A stretch of DNA of 63,633 bases, counting the filler, from Reticulomyxa filosa (taxonomy: Eukaryota > Protista > Foraminifera): assembly GCA_000512085.1 (NCBI GenBank). It is 18 parts of 18 records of this genome, joined end to end, with 100 filler letters (N's around TTAATTAATTAA, not from the genome) between each part and the next. Parts side by side here need not be neighbours in the genome. Positions count along the whole stretch, not along the records: positions 40,751 to 42,021 come from ASPP01021184.1; 17 more parts are not named here. One strand, 5' to 3'. The notes under the pieces were generated by a model. The model was not told the origin of the DNA, ran no database searches, and worked only from the letters and a program-made list of their open reading frames with translations. Below, in pieces: positions 3,300-42,021 of the stretch (position 1 is the stretch's first letter; the number at the start of each line of letters is the position of its first letter). Position numbers and translations under genes: made by a program.

Positions 3300-6200
3300 T
3301 GAAAAGATTGGAAAGGAAAAATGACACAGGTGTTAGAAGAAAGACAGTAAGATTCATGTCTCACGTATTAAACATTTCGGATTGATAAACATGTTGTAAA
3401 CACAACGATGAAAATAGGAAGTGACAATACTTGAAGCCCTTGAAAAGACAGATACGAACAAAGATGGACAAGTTAGCTGGAGTGAATTTAATCAATGATG
3501 ACTCAATTTATAGGCAATGTTAATATTGCATTTTGTATTTTGCATACCTATTGTGCATAACTCATTGAATCTCCCAGCAACAAATAAATAACAAATTGTA
3601 ACTTTGGATTTTTTAATTTGGTTGTGATTTTCGAACATTTTCCGAAACAAATAAGTTATTATTATTATGATTGTTGTTGTTATTACATAGCTATCACAAC
3701 AGCCAAGCTCGAAAGAAGAAGCAGCCAGTGCGACGGAGCTGAAAAATCAAGTACTGTTTGTTTGCATTATTCTGTTGTGTTTGACTTGGAAATGGATATA
3801 TAAATACAACACATTTGAAAGACCGAAATGGACGATATCAAAAGTCGATTCGAAAAATTCGACAGGTTTGTGTTGGAGAGGGAGATGGTACAAAAAAAAA
3901 AGGGGAGGATCAATGAATTTTTTCTTTATGTGTTAAAGTTTTTGGAAACGGGGCATGTTTGAATAGCGATGGAGACGGCAAAATTGATTTGCCTGAGTTG
4001 AAGTCTCTTCAATCTTTGGTAATTATATATATATACATACATATAAGTATATGTATAACATATATAATTTGCGTTTGCTTATTTTGATTGGAACTGAAAC
4101 AAGTACAAAGACGAGATCATAAAGGGCGTGGAAGAAGTGTTCAAAAAGATCGATAAGGGCGAATCGAAAGACTTTGAGTACAAAACCGATGCGCTTGGGA
4201 AATTCCAAACAGCGATTGATGAGTTCAAAAAGAAGAAAAATCGACTTCCCAACGCGACCAAGTTTTTGCGATACTGGAGAGCCGCCTTTGAAGACCAAGA
4301 AACAGAGGTGGACACTGGCATGTACGCGCAGTTGTCGGGGGTATACAAGGATGCAAAGGAGCTGGCCATGCAATTGAAACATAGAACCGACGATGTGTTG
4401 CAAACAAAGTTGTTGGACTCGAAGACCAAAGCAACTCTGCGAGACCTGTGGAAATGGATTGAAGAAAAGGGGCTTACCACCTTGCAAAAGTCGCAAGATA
4501 ACGACGAGGAACTCGACAAGCTGAGGCAACAGTGTGATGTTCTTTCTCAAGAGCATGCTTCACAAAAGACATCATTGGAGACACAAATGAAAATTGTATA
4601 TTTATTTATTTATTTTGATTAATTAAAACAATAAAAAATAAAAATAAAAATAATGAAATCATTGATATAGTCAGCAGAATTGGAAAAACAGCTTCTTAAC
4701 TCGCGTATTGAAGTAGAGCAATTGAAGGACCAATTACAAAGTTTTGCGGAAAACCAAGAGATCTTCCAAACCATTGAACAGCAGCTGACTCCACTGGAAA
4801 CTGATGTAAAGCAAAAGGATCAGAACTTGAATCTCGCCCAAAAAAGCTGGAAGATGTGCGCAAGCCTTCAATTCGTGTTGTGAAGAAAACCAAATGCTCA
4901 AAAGCCAACTCAATTATCTTAACGTTGTCACCGACAAATTGGGCAGAGCCCGAAGTGCTTTGGAATCTACTAATCAAGTTTTTATCTATTAAATAAATAA
5001 ATATGTATATATAAATATTTATATATTTATATACACATGTGCATATTGTATAATTAAAAAAAAAATTTACAATACAAAAACGTCTCCAAGCAGACTCATG
5101 GATTCAACGACAATAAACCAGGTCCGCCTAAGTCCTTTGCCGAGCCCAATTGTCAAAGACACGACCAGCACCAGCGCAATGCTGTTTGCCATCAACGAGC
5201 AGCGAGTGCGAATATCAACAACGTGCAAAGAACTCGCTCGCGTAGCATGATACAGGCCTTCCCTACCAATGACTTGGAGGAGGACATTAACGCAAATTAC
5301 ATCTACCGTACAGGATCGCCATCACCGAGAATATCTACGTTCAGTTGTTGTTTTTATGTGCGTGTGTGTATGTGTTTGTAATGCAAGAGAAGAGAAAGCT
5401 ATAAAAAGGTATTCCAAATAAAATAAAATTTAAAAAAAAAAAAAAAAGACGACAAAATGATCGCGATGACAAATTTGGTCAAAAAATACTAATGTTGAGA
5501 ATAATACGAAAAGACGTGAACGCGTTGAAACAAAGCAAACACTTGCCTCTTGTGGCAGAATATCAAGAGGTATGTTCACAATTCAAGTCTGTTCAACTTT
5601 GCATGATATAATGGAGAGAGAATGAGATTGGGAATGGGGATGGCAGGAAAGAAGGTAGGCAAAGAGTCAATGGACCAAAACGAACTGATTGATATCTTGC
5701 AAAATATAAAACCGGTCCTAGACATACAAGAAAACAACCAAGACCCTTCCGGTGTTAGCTCCAAAGTTGATGACTTGAAAGAGTACATTCGAGGCTCTAT
5801 TGACAAGTTGCCCCTACAATTGCAAACTACTCACTCGGCTCCTGTTCGCATTACGCTCTTACACTTATTTTATTTTGAAAAAAAAAACAATACGTACATA
5901 AAAATAAATCACTCCCGTTGCAAACTGCTAACAAAAAAAAAAGACAAGAGAAGACACCAAGTCGAAGATAGAAACGTACGGCAACGAAGAGTAAATACAA
6001 ATCGAAATAGTGCTAGATATGATCGAAACAAATAACAAAACGAAAAAACAAGCTGCGCTTGAAGACACTGAGTCGCTCAAAGAGACAAAACCAAAATAGA
6101 AAAGGTAATGGAAGAAAAAATATCGGAAACTACAAAGACTGATGCCAATACGAATGGAACATCCATTAACAACACCAATCAGGTATTACTTGCTTTTTTT

Positions 6201-22540: not shown

Positions 22541-25500
22541 ATGTCATTTCAGGCGTCAGTTTGTATTGAAAACAAAACGTATAAAGTGACACTTACCTGG
22601 TTGTCCTTAAAACTTTTGAAAGACAAAGTGAAAGAATTAATAATAACTAATCAACACAAGCCGAAAGACACCGAGTTTGATTTTACAATTAGTGATGCAA
22701 ATGGTCAACCCATTGACAATTTTTCAAAACTTCGAACTGTGTTTGAAACTAATCCTGTTAATTTTTTGGTTAATTTTGGCGACAGTTTTGTGTTGATTTG
22801 CTTTTTATTTTGAAAAAAAAAAAAAAAAAAACATTGGGACACAAATAAACAGAAAACAATGACGAAGAAAAAAAGAATTCAGAACAAAGACAAGAAGATG
22901 AAACAAAAGAAGAAAGCCAGCAAACATTGAATCAAGCTGTAGCTATTCACAAGGAAAAGAATTTGGAAAATGAAAGTAACGAGAAAGATGAAAATAAAAA
23001 AATGGAACCTGCTCAAAGCAAGGAATGGAATGAAGCAAATAAAAAAGCTCGTGGAATGGTGGAGGAAATGATTGACAAGAAACAAAAAGGAATTGTTGTT
23101 GTCGCAACAAATATTGATCAATTGGCAAAAGCAAATAAGCAACAACAATCTCAAAAGGATGTTGTTTTTTTTTTTACGATGATGATTAATTCGGCTCAAT
23201 ATATGAAAAACAAATTGGTGATTTCGCCATATACTGTTTATTTATTTCATTCCAATGTTATCACTTTTGATGATATTACGATTGATGGATGCGTTTATGT
23301 TATCGATTGCAGAGTCAATGGAATTGAAAATTGTCACATTACTCAACAAGTAATCTATACTGAAGAGGCTTGCTTTCGGCTAGGTGCTGTTCATGAAAAA
23401 CATGGAAGATATGATAAAGCAATTGAATATTATGAAAAAGCATTGAAAATTGAAATGGATAAATTGGAATCACAAAATGCAAGAATTATTGACTTATACA
23501 ATCGTGTAGGATTTACTTATAAAAAAAAGACAATATGATAAAGCAATTGAATATTTTGAAAAAGCATTACAACTTAGAATAGAGACACTGGGAGCAGATC
23601 ACATTGCTGTCTCTAATTCGTACACTACTTTAGGAAATGTTTGTAAACAAACAGAAGAATATGATAAAGCAATTGAATATTATGAAAAGTCAATAACAAT
23701 CAAAATAAATAAATTAGGACCAGATCACGCTGAACTTGAGCCTTTGTACATAGATGTGGGACTTGCTTATCAACGCAAAGGAGAAAGCAACAAAGCAATT
23801 CCATATTTTGAAAAATCTACAAAAATTTGGGCAGAAAAACCAGGTGAAGATCAAGTTGCAATTGCATCAACGCTTAATTTATTTGGGCAATCATACTTTT
23901 TGAAAGGAGAGTATGATAAAGCGATAGAATATTTTGAAAAAGAATTGAAAATACAACTGAAACAATTTGGTGAAAATGACCCATCTGTTGCAAGATCATA
24001 CAATCAATTGGGATTAGTGTTGATAAAGGGAAAAGGCCAAATAAATGAATCCAAAGAATATGCAGACAAAGCTTTGAAGATTCTAATGAATAATAAAAGT
24101 AATGATTTTGATTTGGATATTGCAAATTCATATGATATTTTGGGACTGATTTTGGAAAAAAAAGGAACAAATGACAAAGCAATTGAACATTTTGAAAAAT
24201 CATTAGAAATCAGACTAAAAAAGCTTGATAATGATGATCAAGATATTGCCTGGTCTTTTCATTATTTGTCAAATGCATTCAAAAATAAAAATGATTTGAA
24301 CAAATCGATTGAATTTGGTGAGAAAGCGTTACATTTGAGATTGAAAAAATTTGATTCTAACGATCCATGTGTTGGTGAATCATATACTCTTTTAGGAGAT
24401 ATTTATTTTGCAAAAGGAGATAAAGTTAAAGCAAAAAAGTATTATGACGATGCAATATTGATTTTTACTGAACATTTTGGTGAGAATAATCAAAAAACAC
24501 AAAATATTAAATTAGCGCTGGAAAAGATTGATCAAGTTTAACTGTCTTTGTTGTTGTTTCATTGAATTGAAATAAAAACATAAAAAAATAAAACAAAGGG
24601 AAAAGAAGAGAAAAAGAAATGGATGAAATGGTGGAAAGAAAGAAATGAAAAAGATAAATCAGAAATAATTAAACAATTTGAACAATTATCAACAACAGAT
24701 TTTGAAATGTGGTTATTACAGCAAAGTAAATGGAAGAATAATTTTAATCGTGAAAATATTTCTGCCATTTGTATTGCAATTGAATCTTATATTCACTATC
24801 ATGTTTTGTATTTTTATGTATTGCAAATAATAAAAGTATAATGAATTTTATGTGCTTTGTTTAATTAAATTGAATAGGAAAATGAAGAAAAGAAACAAGA
24901 GGAAGTTATTTGTTTATTTTTATTTTCATTTTTTTTTTATGTTTTGATAAATAACAAGAATAATTGCAAAAATAGTTTGAAGCATATCTAACAGTAAACA
25001 AAGATACAAAAACTATAAAAATGAAAGAATTAACTTTTGAAGAACTTCTTCGTCAAAGCTATTCATGTTTGAGTTCAAAAGATTTCCAAAAAATAAATAA
25101 TGAAAATTTAAAAATGCAATTGATGGATATGCAAGATAATATTATTGAATCAGATGAAGCTGTAAAAAAAGAATTTAAAAAAAATAAGCCTTCATTTAAA
25201 TTAAATTGGGTATCATTTCAACAATCAATAATAAAAGGAGAAAATAAAATAATAAAAAATGGATTAGTAATAATGATTGGTATAAGTGAATATGATAAAA
25301 ATATGGGATGGCCTAATCTTCGAAATGTAAAAGAAAAGGATATTATTAATTTTAAACAATTATTTAAAGAAGAATTGAAATATGAATTTGTATGCAATGA
25401 ATCTCCAAAAATGACAAAAGAAGAAGTTCAAGATTTTATGGATCAAATAATAATAAATTATAAACTTCGTAAAAATATAAATAGTTATGATGGATTAATA

Positions 25501-25980
25501 ATGATTGTTTGTGGACATGGAGATGATGGAAATGTATTAGTAACAAGTGATGGAAAATATGTATCAATTGATAAAATACGAGCTTCATTTAATTGTCATG
25601 AAATGGAATCATTCAAAAATTTTCCTAAAATATTTATTATTGATGCTTGTCGTGGTCAAAATATTCCAAAATCACATGAAATTGTAATGAGAGGAAATGA
25701 AAATGCAAATAAAAACTTGCCAATATATGGGCATAATGATGATGGTTTTTTAACTATTTGGTCAACAACTAAAGGATTTCAAGTTGGTGATTTGTCTTTA
25801 TTAAGTAAAAATATTAAAGATATTGTTATATCTAAATATAAAACTGGCTATCCTTTTAAACAAATGTTACAAGATATTCGAAAAGAGATTCGCAACAGTA
25901 AAAGTGGTGAATTGTATTGTGTGGAAAGTCAAGACACTACTTCTTATGACATTGTTTTTTCTGCAAGAAAAATCTATTAA
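22541..25980 (+). CDS. PB1-like / 9x TPR / helical domain / PB1-like / caspase-like (peptidase C14) fusion protein
   Basis: Predicted exons 22541-22784, 22853-24535, 24599-24802, 24878-24904 and 24976-25980. All junctions are GT..AG and in frame, with one 1-nt shift in the A8 run at 23521-23528. Catalytic His in CGHG (25516) and Cys in DACRG (25648). Confidence 0.8.
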
Positions 25981-40750: not shown

Positions 40751-42021
40751 TCATCACCATGTCCTGATATTATTATTATCAATGCATCATACTGCTTTTT
40801 GTTTTTGTGAAGTTTATGACTGGCTATCAAATCTGTCAAAAATTCATTGATGTCATCTTTGTTCATCTTGGGTTCTTTATTGCATACAAATTCATAATTT
40901 AATTCTTGTTCAAATATATACTTGAAATTATTAATATCAATGTCTTTGGCATTTTCAAGATTGGGCCATTTCTTGTTATCTTCATATTCACTGATGGCAA
41001 TCATTATCACCAATGCATTCTTTATTACTTTTGCTTTTCCAATAATTAATGATTGTTGCAATGGAGTCCAAAGTATTTTAAATATAGGTTCATTACGTTC
41101 AAATTCTTTCTTCACAAATTCATCTGATTCAATAATATTATCATTCATATCAACCAATTGTATTTTTAAATATTCATTACTCATTTTTTGAAAATGTTTC
41201 AATTCCAAACAATAATGACTTTGACGGAGAAGTTCTTCAAATGTCAATACTTTCATTTTTATTAATTTTTTAATTTCATCGATTATCACATAAGCTTTTA
41301 ACTATATTATATTTTGTTTCATAAAGTCAAATCAAAAATAAGGTTTACACATTATTAATTAACTTCCTCTTCTTTGTTGTCTTGATTGGTCTATTTATTA
41401 AATAACACAAATACAAATATCGACATGCATTATTATAATTAAGTCAAAAGAAAAACTAACAAAGGCAAAAAAAGTCTCAATAGAAAAATAAATAAAAATG
41501 ATATCATCTTTTGTTATTTCATATTTCCATTTACATTCATTCAATAACCATAGTTTAAATTGTTCATTTGACATTGTTTTAAATTTTTCAATTATTTCTG
41601 TTTTATCTGTTTGTTCTCTTTGATTCCACCATTTCATCCATTTTTTGTTTTTTTCCTATTTTTATTTTTTTTATTTTTATTTTTGTTTAACGCATAATAT
41701 AAGTATATTTTATAACAATGATTTCATTTTCGTTTTGTCCTTTTTCGTCCATTTTATTTGCGTTCTATTTCAAAAAAAAGAAAAAATTTACATTTATTAA
41801 TTTGTTATCTTCATTTTTCAATTATAAATCAATGCTCAACATCGTTATCTTTTTTCACTTTGTTTACTATTGTTTCCATTTCATTTTTCTTCTTTTCTTT
41901 TTCGATTCCTTTTTTCATTTCTTCTTCACTCAACCATTCACGAACTTCAGTTTTCGTGTGTGTTGACATAAGCTGCTTTCCATCAAATCCTCCAATAATA
42001 TGCACATACGTGTTGTCTTCA
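40751..42021 (-). CDS. Kelch-type blade / helical domain / PB1-like / caspase-like protein (both ends truncated)
   Basis: Spliced EDNTYVHIIGGFDGKQLMSTHTKTEVREW...DND|NANK...EII|EKTKKWMKWW..., then LTFEELLRQ...IIIISGHGD. Clear paralog of 24599-25530. Confidence 0.8.

What the first reader, a model, noticed from the sequence alone, without database searches (positions are those of the whole stretch)
40751..42021. Same caspase cassette attached to a different (Kelch-type) repeat domain: exon-shuffled sensor-effector family
Seen in sequence: this paralog has the same WMKWW exon, short acidic exon and LTFEELLRQ...SGHG exon as 24599-25530, again entered through a phase-0 intron. Upstream, however, it has HIIGGFDG...STHTKTEVREW, a Kelch-like GG blade, instead of TPRs. 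Two copies among only 18 contigs imply a large family. Inference: a portable protease cassette is recombined at a phase-0 intron onto variable repeat sensors, analogous to NLR domain shuffling but with no NTPase seen. I do not know of a description of this as a system.
Basis: partly seen in the sequence, partly recalled or inferred. Interest (0 to 1): 0.88.

Follow-up and report, generated by a model that had tools for sequence, protein, structure and literature searches.

The report
Kelch-linked caspase-like protease gene
This short contig of the foraminiferan Reticulomyxa filosa holds the middle of a gene that joins a Kelch propeller to a caspase-like protease through exon-sized modules. It belongs to a large, partly shuffled family whose proteins are in the databases but whose architecture I could not find described.

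Summary
The piece is a whole 1,271-bp contig of Reticulomyxa filosa, and the gene lies on the minus strand. It reads in this order:
- the last blade of a Kelch propeller plus a helical linker
- a 4-helix 'WMKWW' module
- a 27-nt acidic mini-exon
- an exon with a PB1/CIDE-N-like beta-grasp domain and the first half of a caspase-like (peptidase C14) domain, ending at the catalytic His (SGHG) where the contig stops.

All three introns are GT..AG, 62-185 nt and phase 0. They sit at the same codons as in complete paralogs, for example the protein NCBI names 'caspase-8', which has one module per exon.

The cassette also follows TPR arrays, a Ras-like GTPase, a TRAF zinc finger, an ARM-like region and a vWA remnant. 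A topology test rejects a single switch of partner domain. No STAND NTPase was found.

The deposited model RFI_24670 is artificial at both ends and omits the Kelch exon.

Limits:
- No RNA evidence could be had.
- The catalytic Cys lies off the contig.
- 'Sensor-effector' is inference.
- The S1 pocket is not caspase-like, so Asp specificity is doubtful.
- Caspase homologs in Reticulomyxa were published in 2018. The modular architecture appears undescribed.

The parts
41841..42020 (-). Exon A, cut at the contig edge. It encodes the last blade of a six-bladed Kelch propeller ('YVHIIGG', 'STHTKTEV') and then a helical Lys/Glu-rich linker ending '..KKDND'.
   Evidence: It aligns to the Kelch tails of P0018, P0027, P0040, P0052, P0025 and P0054 at 38-51% identity. 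The equivalent residues 302-349 of P0138 are two strands plus a long helix in a model with pLDDT 92.9. The fold matches Kelch propellers. dN/dS against the nearest paralog is 0.41.
41656..41840 (-). Intron 1: 185 nt, GTTGAG..ATAG, phase 0.
   Evidence: The donor is positionally homologous to the annotated exon-1 donor of P0138 (L006) and to the same site in L009. The acceptor is identical in four paralogs. There is no RNA evidence.
41717..41752 (-). The first coding exon of the deposited model RFI_24670 ('MDEKGQNENEII'). It is probably an annotation artefact lying inside intron 1.
   Evidence: It lies in a stretch of about 100 nt that the paralogs L009, L006 and L002 lack. A predictor needs an ATG on a truncated contig.
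41461..41655 (-). Exon B: the 'WMKWW' (W) module, a lineage-specific domain of four helices.
   Evidence: It corresponds to the 0-0 exon (222-246 nt with the acidic tail) of P0018 (two copies), P0027, P0044 and P0138. The model has pLDDT 91 with four helices. No match was found in Pfam, the PDB or the Atlas.
41391..41460 (-). Intron 2: 70 nt, GTTAGT..ATAG, phase 0.
   Evidence: The same intron occurs in the nearest paralog L009 at 88% identity.
41364..41390 (-). Acidic mini-exon, 27 nt, 'TNQDNKEEE', phase 0-0.
   Evidence: It is a separate 27-30 nt exon in P0044 and P0245 as well, and is fused to the W exon in P0018 and P0138.
41302..41363 (-). Intron 3: 62 nt, GTTAAT..ATAG, phase 0. This is the entry to the protease exon.
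   Evidence: It sits at the same codon, two residues before 'AY[VI]I[IV]', in Kelch-type, TPR-type and Ras-type paralogs.
41068..41301 (-). Exon C, first part: a beta-grasp domain of PB1/CIDE-N type ('AYVIID..LTFEELLRQ..IIESDEFV..FKILW').
   Evidence: In the model of the P0138 equivalent, the top fold matches are PB1 domains (Z 8.4, 8.2, 8.0), followed by CIDE-N (7.7, 7.4) and ubiquitin-like domains at about 7. There is no Pfam PB1 or CIDE-N hit.
40753..41067 (-). Exon C, second part: a short linker and the N-terminal half of the peptidase C14 (caspase-like) large subunit, from 'ALVIMIAISEY' to 'SGHGD'. It is cut by the contig edge.
   Evidence: Paralogs 70-89% identical hit PF00656 and continue to 'PKIFIIDxCRG'. 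The family profile hits caspase-3 at E 2e-21. dN/dS is 0.24.
40759..40761 (-). Codon of the predicted catalytic histidine (in SGHG).
   Evidence: It is invariant in 30 foraminiferal sequences and aligns with the His of caspase-3 'SHGE'. The deposited model splices this codon out.

Best explanation
The contig carries the middle of one minus-strand gene of Reticulomyxa filosa. The encoded protein is built from four modules in this order:
- a six-bladed Kelch propeller, of which only the last blade and a helical linker are on the contig
- a foraminifer-specific four-helix 'W' module
- a PB1/CIDE-N-like beta-grasp domain
- a caspase-like C14 protease, of which the contig holds the part up to the catalytic His.

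Each module is an exon or exon group bounded by short phase-0 introns at positions shared with paralogs. This is why modules can be dropped, doubled or placed behind other N-terminal domains without breaking the reading frame.

Shown here: the anatomy, the homology, the conserved intron positions and phases, the family size, the several partner domains, and purifying selection on all exons.

Inferred mechanism: the propeller (or the TPR array in other members) binds a partner. The W and PB1-like modules bring several chains together. The protease is then switched on by proximity, as initiator caspases and paracaspase are, but without a death-fold domain and without a STAND NTPase.

The S1 pocket has an invariant Asp two residues before the catalytic Cys and lacks both caspase arginines. 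The cleavage preference is therefore more likely basic than Asp.
For: - Identity: the piece is 99% identical to RFI_24670. Every exon matches full-length paralogs.
- One gene rather than two: the donor at 41840 is homologous to the annotated Kelch-exon donor of P0138. The conserved coding 'EKNKK' lies upstream of the only Met of the W exon, so an upstream exon is needed. The linker type 'EWL[SN]EEE..KKDxN' occurs in the fused Kelch-caspase models and in P0170, which lies 90 nt upstream of the cassette model P0245. Kelch proteins that go with WD40 carry a different tail. Sixteen deposited models join Kelch, beta-grasp and caspase.
- Folds: Kelch model pLDDT 92.9, matching Kelch propellers at E 7e-13. 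W plus beta-grasp model pLDDT 91.4, with PB1 domains as top matches at Z 8.0-8.4.
- Protease: the family profile hits caspase-3 at 2e-21, and His and Cys are invariant in 30 sequences.
- Modularity.
- Partner switches.
- Constraint: dN/dS is 0.30 over 314 codons against the nearest paralog.
- Expression of the architecture elsewhere: Kelch plus C14 sits in one predicted protein of Bolivina argentea in EukProt. To my knowledge that set comes from a transcriptome.
Against: - No sequencing run could be listed, so no junction read supports any splice of this copy.
- An in-frame stop follows 3 codons after the proposed donor of exon A. A Kelch-only gene plus a separate cassette gene therefore remains possible, and NCBI annotated the locus that way.
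- The contig lacks the rest of the propeller, the catalytic Cys and the small subunit, so intactness of this copy is unknown.
- Some paralogous loci are visibly decayed (L001).
- The beta-grasp assignment to PB1/CIDE-N is by fold only, with Z only about 1 above generic ubiquitin-like matches and no Pfam hit.
- A homodimer prediction of that domain gave no answer.
- There is no biochemical evidence for activity, oligomerisation or any ligand.
Confidence: 0.7

Rival explanations
1. There are two adjacent genes rather than one. A Kelch-only gene ends at the TGA three codons past 41841, and a separate W/beta-grasp/caspase gene starts downstream, either as NCBI annotated it or at the Met of 'WMKWW'.
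For: The stop codon lies right after the proposed donor. NCBI split the locus here, and did the same in the nearest paralog L009, where the Kelch model P0170 and the cassette model P0245 lie 90 nt apart. Several deposited models start at 'MKWW'. Many Kelch proteins are annotated as stand-alone.
Against: The same donor position is used in the fused model of P0138, whose W exon has Val in place of that Met. 'EKNKK' in front of the Met is conserved as coding sequence. NCBI's start exon lies in an insertion that paralogs lack. Many 'stand-alone' Kelch tails are read-through into an intron. The caspase-type linker is specific to this class.
Confidence: 0.2
2. This copy is a dead fragment of a repetitive, decaying gene family and makes no functional protein.
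For: The contig is only 1,271 bp in a very fragmented, repeat-rich assembly. Paralogous loci show frame shifts and partial second copies (L001). Many database members are short fragments. No RNA evidence was found.
Against: All four exons are open. The splice signals are intact. dN/dS is 0.24-0.41 in every exon against a paralog at dS 0.37. However, that measures constraint since the duplication, not today.
Confidence: 0.15
3. The family is real, but it is not a death or immune sensor-effector. The proteins would be regulatory proteases that Kelch or TPR adaptors bring to cytoskeletal or trafficking substrates in the reticulopodial network.
For: Kelch propellers are general protein-binding adaptors, and the best fold matches are substrate receptors such as KLHDC10, KLHDC2/3 and LZTR1. 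The same Kelch family is also fused to WD40 or stands alone in hundreds of proteins. The Kelch core is well conserved, with about 85 positions at least 90% conserved, unlike a hypervariable receptor. It is established knowledge that metacaspases and paracaspase have many non-death roles.
Against: The partner domains in this and related foraminiferal proteins (TRAF zinc finger, MATH, SAM, TPR) are those typical of death and immune signalling. The large, patchy, partly decayed family resembles conflict-driven families. Neither point is decisive.
Confidence: 0.3

Closest known systems
Caspase-like proteins of Reticulomyxa filosa reported by Klim et al. 2018 (PMC5982838), later used as outgroup in metazoan caspase trees (PMC10959488)
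   Same: This is the same protein family and the same organism. Those authors already showed that the C14 domain groups with animal caspases. My PDB searches agree.
   Different: The passages I retrieved from those papers (term searches on 'Reticulomyxa') treat the C14 domain only. I found no mention of the Kelch, TPR or other partners, the W and PB1-like modules, the exon structure or the S1 differences. No paper in the searched library combines Reticulomyxa with Kelch, or foraminifera with caspase and Kelch.
Animal caspases (peptidase subfamily C14A, e.g. caspase-3, -7 and -8)
   Same: They are the best sequence matches among solved structures (caspase-3 at E 2e-21). The His and Cys dyad lies in 'GHG' and 'ACRG' contexts, and the order of large and small subunits is the same.
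   Different: There is no CARD or DED; a beta-grasp domain sits in front of the protease instead. The residues equivalent to caspase-3 Arg64, Gln161 and Arg207 are Leu/Lys, an invariant Asp, and a deleted loop. Asp specificity is therefore not expected.
Paracaspase MALT1 and metacaspases (C14B)
   Same: They share the C14 fold and an Asp two residues before the catalytic Cys, which in those enzymes lines a pocket for basic P1 residues (my knowledge of the published structures, not tested here). The protease is fused to protein-interaction domains, and paracaspase is activated by oligomerisation.
   Different: They are not the nearest by sequence: no metacaspase or paracaspase appears among the 60 best PDB matches. 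The accessory domains differ (death domain and Ig in MALT1; proline-rich or zinc-finger prodomains in metacaspases).
Bacterial caspase homologs (orthocaspases) fused to WD40, TPR and other repeat domains
   Same: A C14 protease is joined directly to a repeat domain without an NTPase. They form large and variable families (my knowledge, not tested here).
   Different: Those are prokaryotic single-ORF fusions. Here the joining is through phase-0 introns in a eukaryote, with Kelch as the main partner and two extra modules in between.
NLR/STAND sensor-effector proteins of animals, plants and fungi
   Same: They combine a repeat domain with an effector domain in a combinatorial way, in expanded families.
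   Different: No NACHT or NB-ARC NTPase was found in any member scanned. One member carries a small Ras-like GTPase instead.
PB1 and CIDE-N domains (p62, Par6/aPKC, MEKK2/3-MEK5; DFF40/45, CIDE-A)
   Same: They share the beta-grasp fold with the same strand and helix order, and they are the top structural matches. The family motif '..D..N.IIESDE.V..F' resembles the acidic OPCA motif of PB1 domains (my reading, not tested).
   Different: There is no sequence-profile match. Head-to-tail assembly has not been shown (one search gave no answer).

Membership tests
Peptidase C14 (caspase/metacaspase superfamily, Pfam PF00656) | Significant match to the family profile | tested here: inconclusive
   The window's half-domain gives no Pfam hit even at E<=10. 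Paralogs 70% and 89% identical to it (P0002, P0004) hit PF00656, as do the long members (E 1e-12 to 1e-32). A profile of 30 family members hits caspase-3 at E 2e-21.
Peptidase C14 (caspase/metacaspase superfamily, Pfam PF00656) | Catalytic histidine after the hydrophobic strand (xxxSHG / GHG) | tested here: met
   'ALIIIISGHG' lies at 40756-40785 with the His codon at 40759-40761. The His is invariant in the family and aligns with the caspase-3 His.
Peptidase C14 (caspase/metacaspase superfamily, Pfam PF00656) | Catalytic cysteine (QACRG / DxCHSG context) | not testable with these tools
   It lies beyond the contig edge. In paralogs it is invariant as 'D-x-C-R-G' about 38 residues after the His.
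Caspases in the strict sense (C14A, Asp-specific) | Nearest relatives are animal caspases | tested here: met
   All 60 best PDB matches are caspase-3 or caspase-7. This agrees with PMC5982838.
Caspases in the strict sense (C14A, Asp-specific) | S1 pocket Arg-Gln-Arg (caspase-3 Arg64, Gln161, Arg207) | tested here: not met
   In the profile alignment to caspase-3, Arg64 pairs with a nearly invariant Leu (a neighbouring variable Lys/Pro/Glu; Glu in the window copy). Gln161 pairs with an invariant Asp. The 'SWR' loop carrying Arg207 is an insertion that the family lacks.
Caspases in the strict sense (C14A, Asp-specific) | Death-fold prodomain (CARD/DED) in the long-prodomain members | tested here: not met
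   The region in front of the protease is a 4-helix module plus a beta-grasp domain. No CARD or DED was found in Pfam scans.
Kelch beta-propeller | Pfam Kelch repeats at or above the curated cut-off | tested here: met
   This holds for paralogs: Kelch_1 scores 25.2, 22.3 and 20.5 bits against a cut-off of 20.1 in P0025, P0040 and P0054, and Kelch_6 scores 26.0 against 25.3 in P0070. Precomputed Kelch families are listed for most of the 120 shown hits. The window itself holds only about 25 residues of the propeller and gives no Pfam Kelch hit.
Kelch beta-propeller | Six-bladed propeller fold, with the window's segment as its last blade | tested here: met
   The model of P0138:1-350 has pLDDT 92.9 and pTM 0.91. 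Its best matches are KLHDC10, NS1-BP, LZTR1 and KLHDC2/3 Kelch domains (E 7e-13 to 1e-9). The window's 'YVHIIGG..STHTKTEV' aligns to strands 302-306 and 317-321 of that model.
PB1 / CIDE-N beta-grasp domains | Beta-grasp fold closest to PB1 or CIDE-N | tested here: met
   VIA-align gives Z 8.4 (MEKK3 PB1), 8.2 and 8.0, and CIDE-N 7.7 and 7.4, with rmsd 2.3-2.7 over 70-73 residues. Generic ubiquitin-like domains score only about 1 Z lower. Foldseek E values are 0.01 or worse.
PB1 / CIDE-N beta-grasp domains | Sequence-profile match (PF00564 / PF02017) | tested here: not met
   None of the 56 members scanned hits either family at E<=1.
PB1 / CIDE-N beta-grasp domains | Head-to-tail self-association | tested here: inconclusive
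   A two-copy complex prediction scored 0.01. The tool's verdict was 'no answer', which counts neither for nor against.
NLR / STAND sensor-effector proteins | Central NACHT or NB-ARC NTPase | tested here: not met
   No such Pfam family appeared in the proteins or N-terminal parts scanned, which include TPR-type members of 1,100-1,200 residues. The first 270-400 residues of the long TPR-type members have no Pfam match at all, so an unrecognised domain cannot be excluded.

The most novel reading that the evidence does not exclude
Foraminifera have built a caspase-type signalling system of their own. It consists of dozens of NTPase-free proteins in which interchangeable binding domains feed, through a lineage-specific helical module and a PB1/CIDE-N-like assembly domain, into a caspase-like protease with a metacaspase-like pocket. 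The binding domains are Kelch, TPR, TRAF zinc finger, MATH, SAM and Ras. On this reading the beta-grasp domain plays the filament-forming role that CARD and DED play in animals. The family would serve self/non-self or pathogen-triggered local death in a giant syncytial cell, and phase-0 exon shuffling would be the means by which new specificities arise.
Probability: 0.15. Interest if true: 0.85.

Novelty: new variant of a known kind. Interest (0 to 1): 0.58.

Why it matters
Caspases with regulated, adaptor-driven activation are usually treated as an animal invention. The Reticulomyxa homologs have so far been used only as a tree outgroup.

If these proteins are active, they show a protist lineage wiring a caspase-type protease to Kelch, TPR, TRAF, MATH and SAM modules through a PB1-like domain instead of a death fold. 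That gives an independent test case for how proximity-activated proteases and their sensor domains are assembled.

The one-module-per-exon, all-phase-0 layout is also a clean example of exon shuffling outside animals.

In practice, the finding shows that the deposited models of this family are often split or truncated. Here the model loses both the Kelch exon and the catalytic His, which would distort any census or phylogeny built on them.

Tried and rejected
- Pfam on the three window pieces gave nothing usable. There was no C14 hit and no Kelch hit, only sub-threshold noise.
- phmmer of exon C against the PDB gave only chance matches (E 0.16).
- The look-up of sequencing runs listed no run, so read laying was not used and splice junctions could not be tested.
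I searched exon by exon by reference and used the deposited model P0001 and complete paralogs instead.
- The Atlas search for the W module gave no usable feature hit and only generic helical matches. Foldseek and VIA rows hardly cover that module, so 'no known fold' is not claimed, only 'none found'.
- Complex prediction on two copies of the beta-grasp domain returned 'no answer'. It is not evidence either way.
- Rfam found no family on either strand. Tandem repeats are only A/T-rich low-complexity runs. Plus-strand ORFs are low-complexity read-throughs of the antisense strand.
- I considered a 48-nt exon at 41764-41717 ('NANKMDEKGQNENEII', phase 0-0, good acceptor) as part of the gene. I rejected it as unlikely because the stretch is an insertion absent from L009, L006 and L002. 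It cannot be excluded without RNA.
- I considered the HSP70 plus cassette model (P0055) as a further partner. It is not counted because it may be a chimeric model and I did not inspect its contig.
- A test for diversifying selection on the Kelch domain was not done, because DNA was on hand for only a few paralogs.
Full report
**What is there**

The piece 40751-42021 is 25% G+C. It is 99% identical over its coding part to hypothetical protein RFI_24670 of the foraminiferan Reticulomyxa filosa, whose only contig is 1,271 bases long. So the piece is a whole short contig of assembly GCA_000512085.1.

The gene lies on the minus strand. Translating the three minus frames and reading the DNA gives four open blocks:
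- Exon A, 42020-41841: '..EDNTYVHIIGGFDGKQLMSTHTKTEVREW' followed by a Lys/Glu-rich stretch ending 'KKDND'.
- Exon B, 41655-41461: 'EKNKKWMKWW..' to '..FFAF'.
- A 27-nt exon, 41390-41364: 'TNQDNKEEE'.
- Exon C, 41301-40753: 'LKAYVIID..LTFEELLRQ..FKILW..ALVIMIAISEY..YDALIIIISGHGD'. It runs into the contig edge.

The three gaps (185, 70 and 62 nt) start GTT, end ATAG and fall between codons. Their G+C is 18-20%, against 27% for the exons.

**Is it more than chance, and is it one gene?**

tblastn of ten paralogous proteins onto the piece matches all blocks. The Kelch tail matches six full-length proteins at 38-51% identity, with E down to 1e-15 in this small search space.

I mapped deposited gene models onto their contigs. 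The most complete relative, P0138 (758 aa, named 'caspase-8' by NCBI), has exactly three exons, all phase 0:
- Kelch plus linker, 1074 nt
- W module plus acidic tail, 228 nt
- beta-grasp plus whole caspase domain, 972 nt.

A DNA alignment shows that the window's 'GAT|GTTGAG' at 41840 is the positional homolog of the annotated exon-1 donor of P0138. The acceptor 'AAAATAG|GAAAAAAACAAAAAATGG' is shared by four paralogs.

The deposited model RFI_24670 instead starts at an ATG (41752) inside a stretch of about 100 nt in this intron that the paralogs lack. It ends '..KKQTW' by means of a 28-nt pseudo-intron that removes 'YDALIIIISGH', although the frame is open to the contig edge. I read both ends as artefacts of forcing a complete model onto a truncated contig.

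Several observations favour one Kelch-to-caspase gene:
- 'EKNKK' is conserved as coding sequence upstream of the only Met of the W exon.
- P0138 has Val in place of that Met.
- The helical linker type 'EWL[SN]EEE..KKDxN' occurs in the fused Kelch-caspase models and in P0170, which lies 90 nt upstream of the cassette model P0245. The Kelch proteins that go with WD40 end in a different linker.

The nearest paralog (P0245, 79% identical, sister with support 99/94) has the same split annotation: a Kelch model lies 90 nt upstream on the same strand.

No public run could be listed for the piece, so no junction read exists for this copy. I put the single-gene reading at about 0.8.

**What the modules are**

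*Kelch.* The N-terminal domain of the paralogs finds 313 R. filosa proteins, most with Pfam Kelch families. An AlphaFold model of P0138:1-350 (pLDDT 92.9, pTM 0.91) matches six-bladed Kelch propellers such as KLHDC10, NS1-BP, LZTR1 and KLHDC2/3 (E 7e-13 to 1e-9). The window's exon A corresponds to the last two strands and to a long helix that follows them.

*W module and beta-grasp.* A model of P0138:352-526 (pLDDT 91.4) shows a four-helix module and then a beta-grasp domain.
- For the helical part I found no convincing relative.
- For the beta-grasp part the three best structural matches are PB1 domains (Z 8.4, 8.2, 8.0). These are followed by further PB1, CIDE-N (7.7, 7.4) and generic ubiquitin-like domains near 7. 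Foldseek agrees in kind but only at E of 0.01 or worse. No Pfam PB1 or CIDE-N hit appears in 56 members.
- So the assignment is 'beta-grasp, closest to PB1/CIDE-N', by fold only.

*Protease.* The window fragment alone gives no Pfam hit. Paralogs 70-89% identical hit Peptidase_C14 and continue to 'PKIFIIDxCRG'. A profile of 30 foraminiferal sequences hits caspase-3 at E 2e-21, and all 60 best solved matches are caspase-3 or caspase-7. His and Cys are invariant.

In that alignment the caspase S1 residues are not kept:
- caspase-3 Arg64 faces a nearly invariant Leu (the window has Glu next to it)
- Gln161 faces an invariant Asp
- the loop with Arg207 is missing.

An Asp two residues before the catalytic Cys is what paracaspase and metacaspases have (my knowledge of the published structures). 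I therefore call the domain 'caspase-like by descent, with specificity probably not Asp'. I do not file it as a caspase in the strict sense.

**Family, partners and shuffling**

An exhaustive search with exon C found 104 cluster representatives at E<=1e-3. The strong ones I looked up are R. filosa. The weak ones I looked up are from the foraminifera Bolivina argentea and Nonionella stella, or from unnamed metagenome contigs.

Among longer R. filosa models the cassette follows these partners:
- a Kelch propeller: 16 models carry Kelch, beta-grasp and caspase together
- TPR arrays: P0021, P0241, P0242, P0246, P0248
- a Ras-like GTPase: P0236
- an ARM-like region: P0252
- a TRAF-type zinc finger: P0044
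- regions with no known domain.

On contig L001, vWA-like reading frames lie directly upstream of a frame-shifted cassette. For the Ras and ARM-like fusions I checked the contigs, and no Kelch exon is hidden in an intron.

The W exon is absent (P0040, P0021), single, or doubled in tandem (P0018, P0235). The beta-grasp is absent or truncated in P0054 and P0044.

The intron in front of the beta-grasp/caspase exon sits two residues before 'AY[VI]I[IV]' and is phase 0 in the Kelch-, TPR- and Ras-type genes and in the window.

A maximum-likelihood tree of the beta-grasp plus caspase part (37 rows) has these features:
- the TPR-linked cassettes fall in two well-supported clades
- the Ras-, ARM-like- and vWA-linked ones sit among Kelch-linked ones
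- deep branches are weak.

An AU test rejects the tree in which all non-Kelch cassettes form one clade (delta lnL 64, p 0.0006). The caveat is that I named the group after seeing a first tree.

My reading is that partner switches happened several times, but most members arose by duplication of whole genes.

The Kelch domain is itself promiscuous. In the 120 best hits it is alone in most, fused to WD40 in 12 and to the caspase cassette in 6. No NACHT or NB-ARC was seen anywhere.

In the other foraminifera the C14 domain is combined with MATH and SAM, with UEV plus a RanBP zinc finger plus SAM, with GGACT, or directly with Kelch.

**Constraint**

Against the nearest paralog, dN/dS is 0.41 for exon A, 0.38 for exon B and 0.24 for exon C, giving 0.30 overall at dS 0.37. 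All parts, including the Kelch tail, have therefore evolved as coding sequence. Oddly, the two short introns are 88-93% identical, better kept than synonymous sites. I did not resolve this.

**How it most likely works**

Shown: a modular protein in which a protein-binding propeller, a helical module, a PB1-like domain and a C14 protease follow one another.

Inferred: the propeller binds a partner, the middle modules bring chains together, and the protease is activated by proximity. A homodimer prediction for the beta-grasp domain gave no answer, and nothing is known of ligands or substrates. A non-death regulatory role is a serious rival.

**What is known**

Klim et al. 2018 (PMC5982838) reported caspase-like proteins of Reticulomyxa grouping with animal caspases. 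Later papers use one of them as an outgroup. I found no paper in the searched library that mentions Reticulomyxa together with Kelch, or foraminifera together with caspase and Kelch. None describes the modules or the exon structure. The Reticulomyxa genome paper did not appear in any search result, so I could not check it. The fusion proteins are in NCBI and UniProt under automatic names.

**Verdict**

I rate it a new variant of a known kind: C14 proteases joined to interaction domains. The value is moderate to good for the evolution of regulated proteolysis and for re-annotation of this genome.

Noticed in passing
window 41717-41752 and 40764-40791 (minus strand): The deposited model RFI_24670 starts in an intron-specific insertion. 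It ends through a 28-nt pseudo-intron that deletes the catalytic His motif, so it reads '..KKQTW*' while the open frame continues '..KKQYDALIIIISGHGD' to the contig edge.
   Followed up: yes
alignment A4 and the PDB alignment (family-wide; window 40951-40983 for the first site): The caspase S1 residues are not kept. Caspase-3 Arg64 faces Leu (with Lys/Pro/Glu beside it), Gln161 faces an invariant Asp, and the Arg207 loop is absent. The 'D-x-C' context is that of meta- and paracaspases.
   Followed up: partly
window introns 41391-41460 and 41302-41363 against L009:4613-4679 and 4710-4766: The introns are 88% and 93% identical between the two paralogs, although about 30% of synonymous sites differ (dS 0.37). 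Possible causes are composition bias of the estimate, constraint on very short introns, or gene conversion.
   Followed up: no
L001:1400-3750: vWA-like reading frames in shifting frames lie directly upstream of a beta-grasp/caspase cassette that has a frame shift just after 'SGHGDDE'. A second, degenerate large-subunit copy lies at 3470-3745. This looks like a decaying tandem locus or poor assembly.
   Followed up: partly
L009:2722-5970: The Kelch model P0170 and the cassette model P0245 lie 90 nt apart on the same strand. The Kelch model's last residues ('VGHAL') read through the homologous splice donor. This is probably one gene split by annotation, and a further Kelch fragment lies at 6-401.
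   Followed up: partly
proteins: The Kelch family has at least 313 members. Twelve of the 120 best are fused to WD40 through a different linker ('DPSQLSKNEIK..QYWIR..KLGWIDDF'). Many 'stand-alone' models end in hydrophobic read-through right after 'DPSQL', which suggests another missed phase-0 intron.
   Followed up: no
L002:1559-2068 (P0018) and P0235: The W module is present twice in tandem, each copy as its own 222-228-nt phase 0-0 exon. This is an exon duplication inside the family.
   Followed up: partly
P0110, P0099, P0090, P0105 (Nonionella stella, Bolivina argentea): Other foraminifera combine the C14 domain with MATH-MATH-SAM and a C-terminal SAM, with UEV plus a RanBP zinc finger plus SAM, with GGACT, or with Kelch directly, without the W and beta-grasp modules.
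   Followed up: partly
L006:3468-5639 (minus strand): A 723-residue TPR protein is encoded next to the Kelch-caspase gene P0138, on the opposite strand. I did not examine whether it relates to the TPR-caspase members.
   Followed up: no
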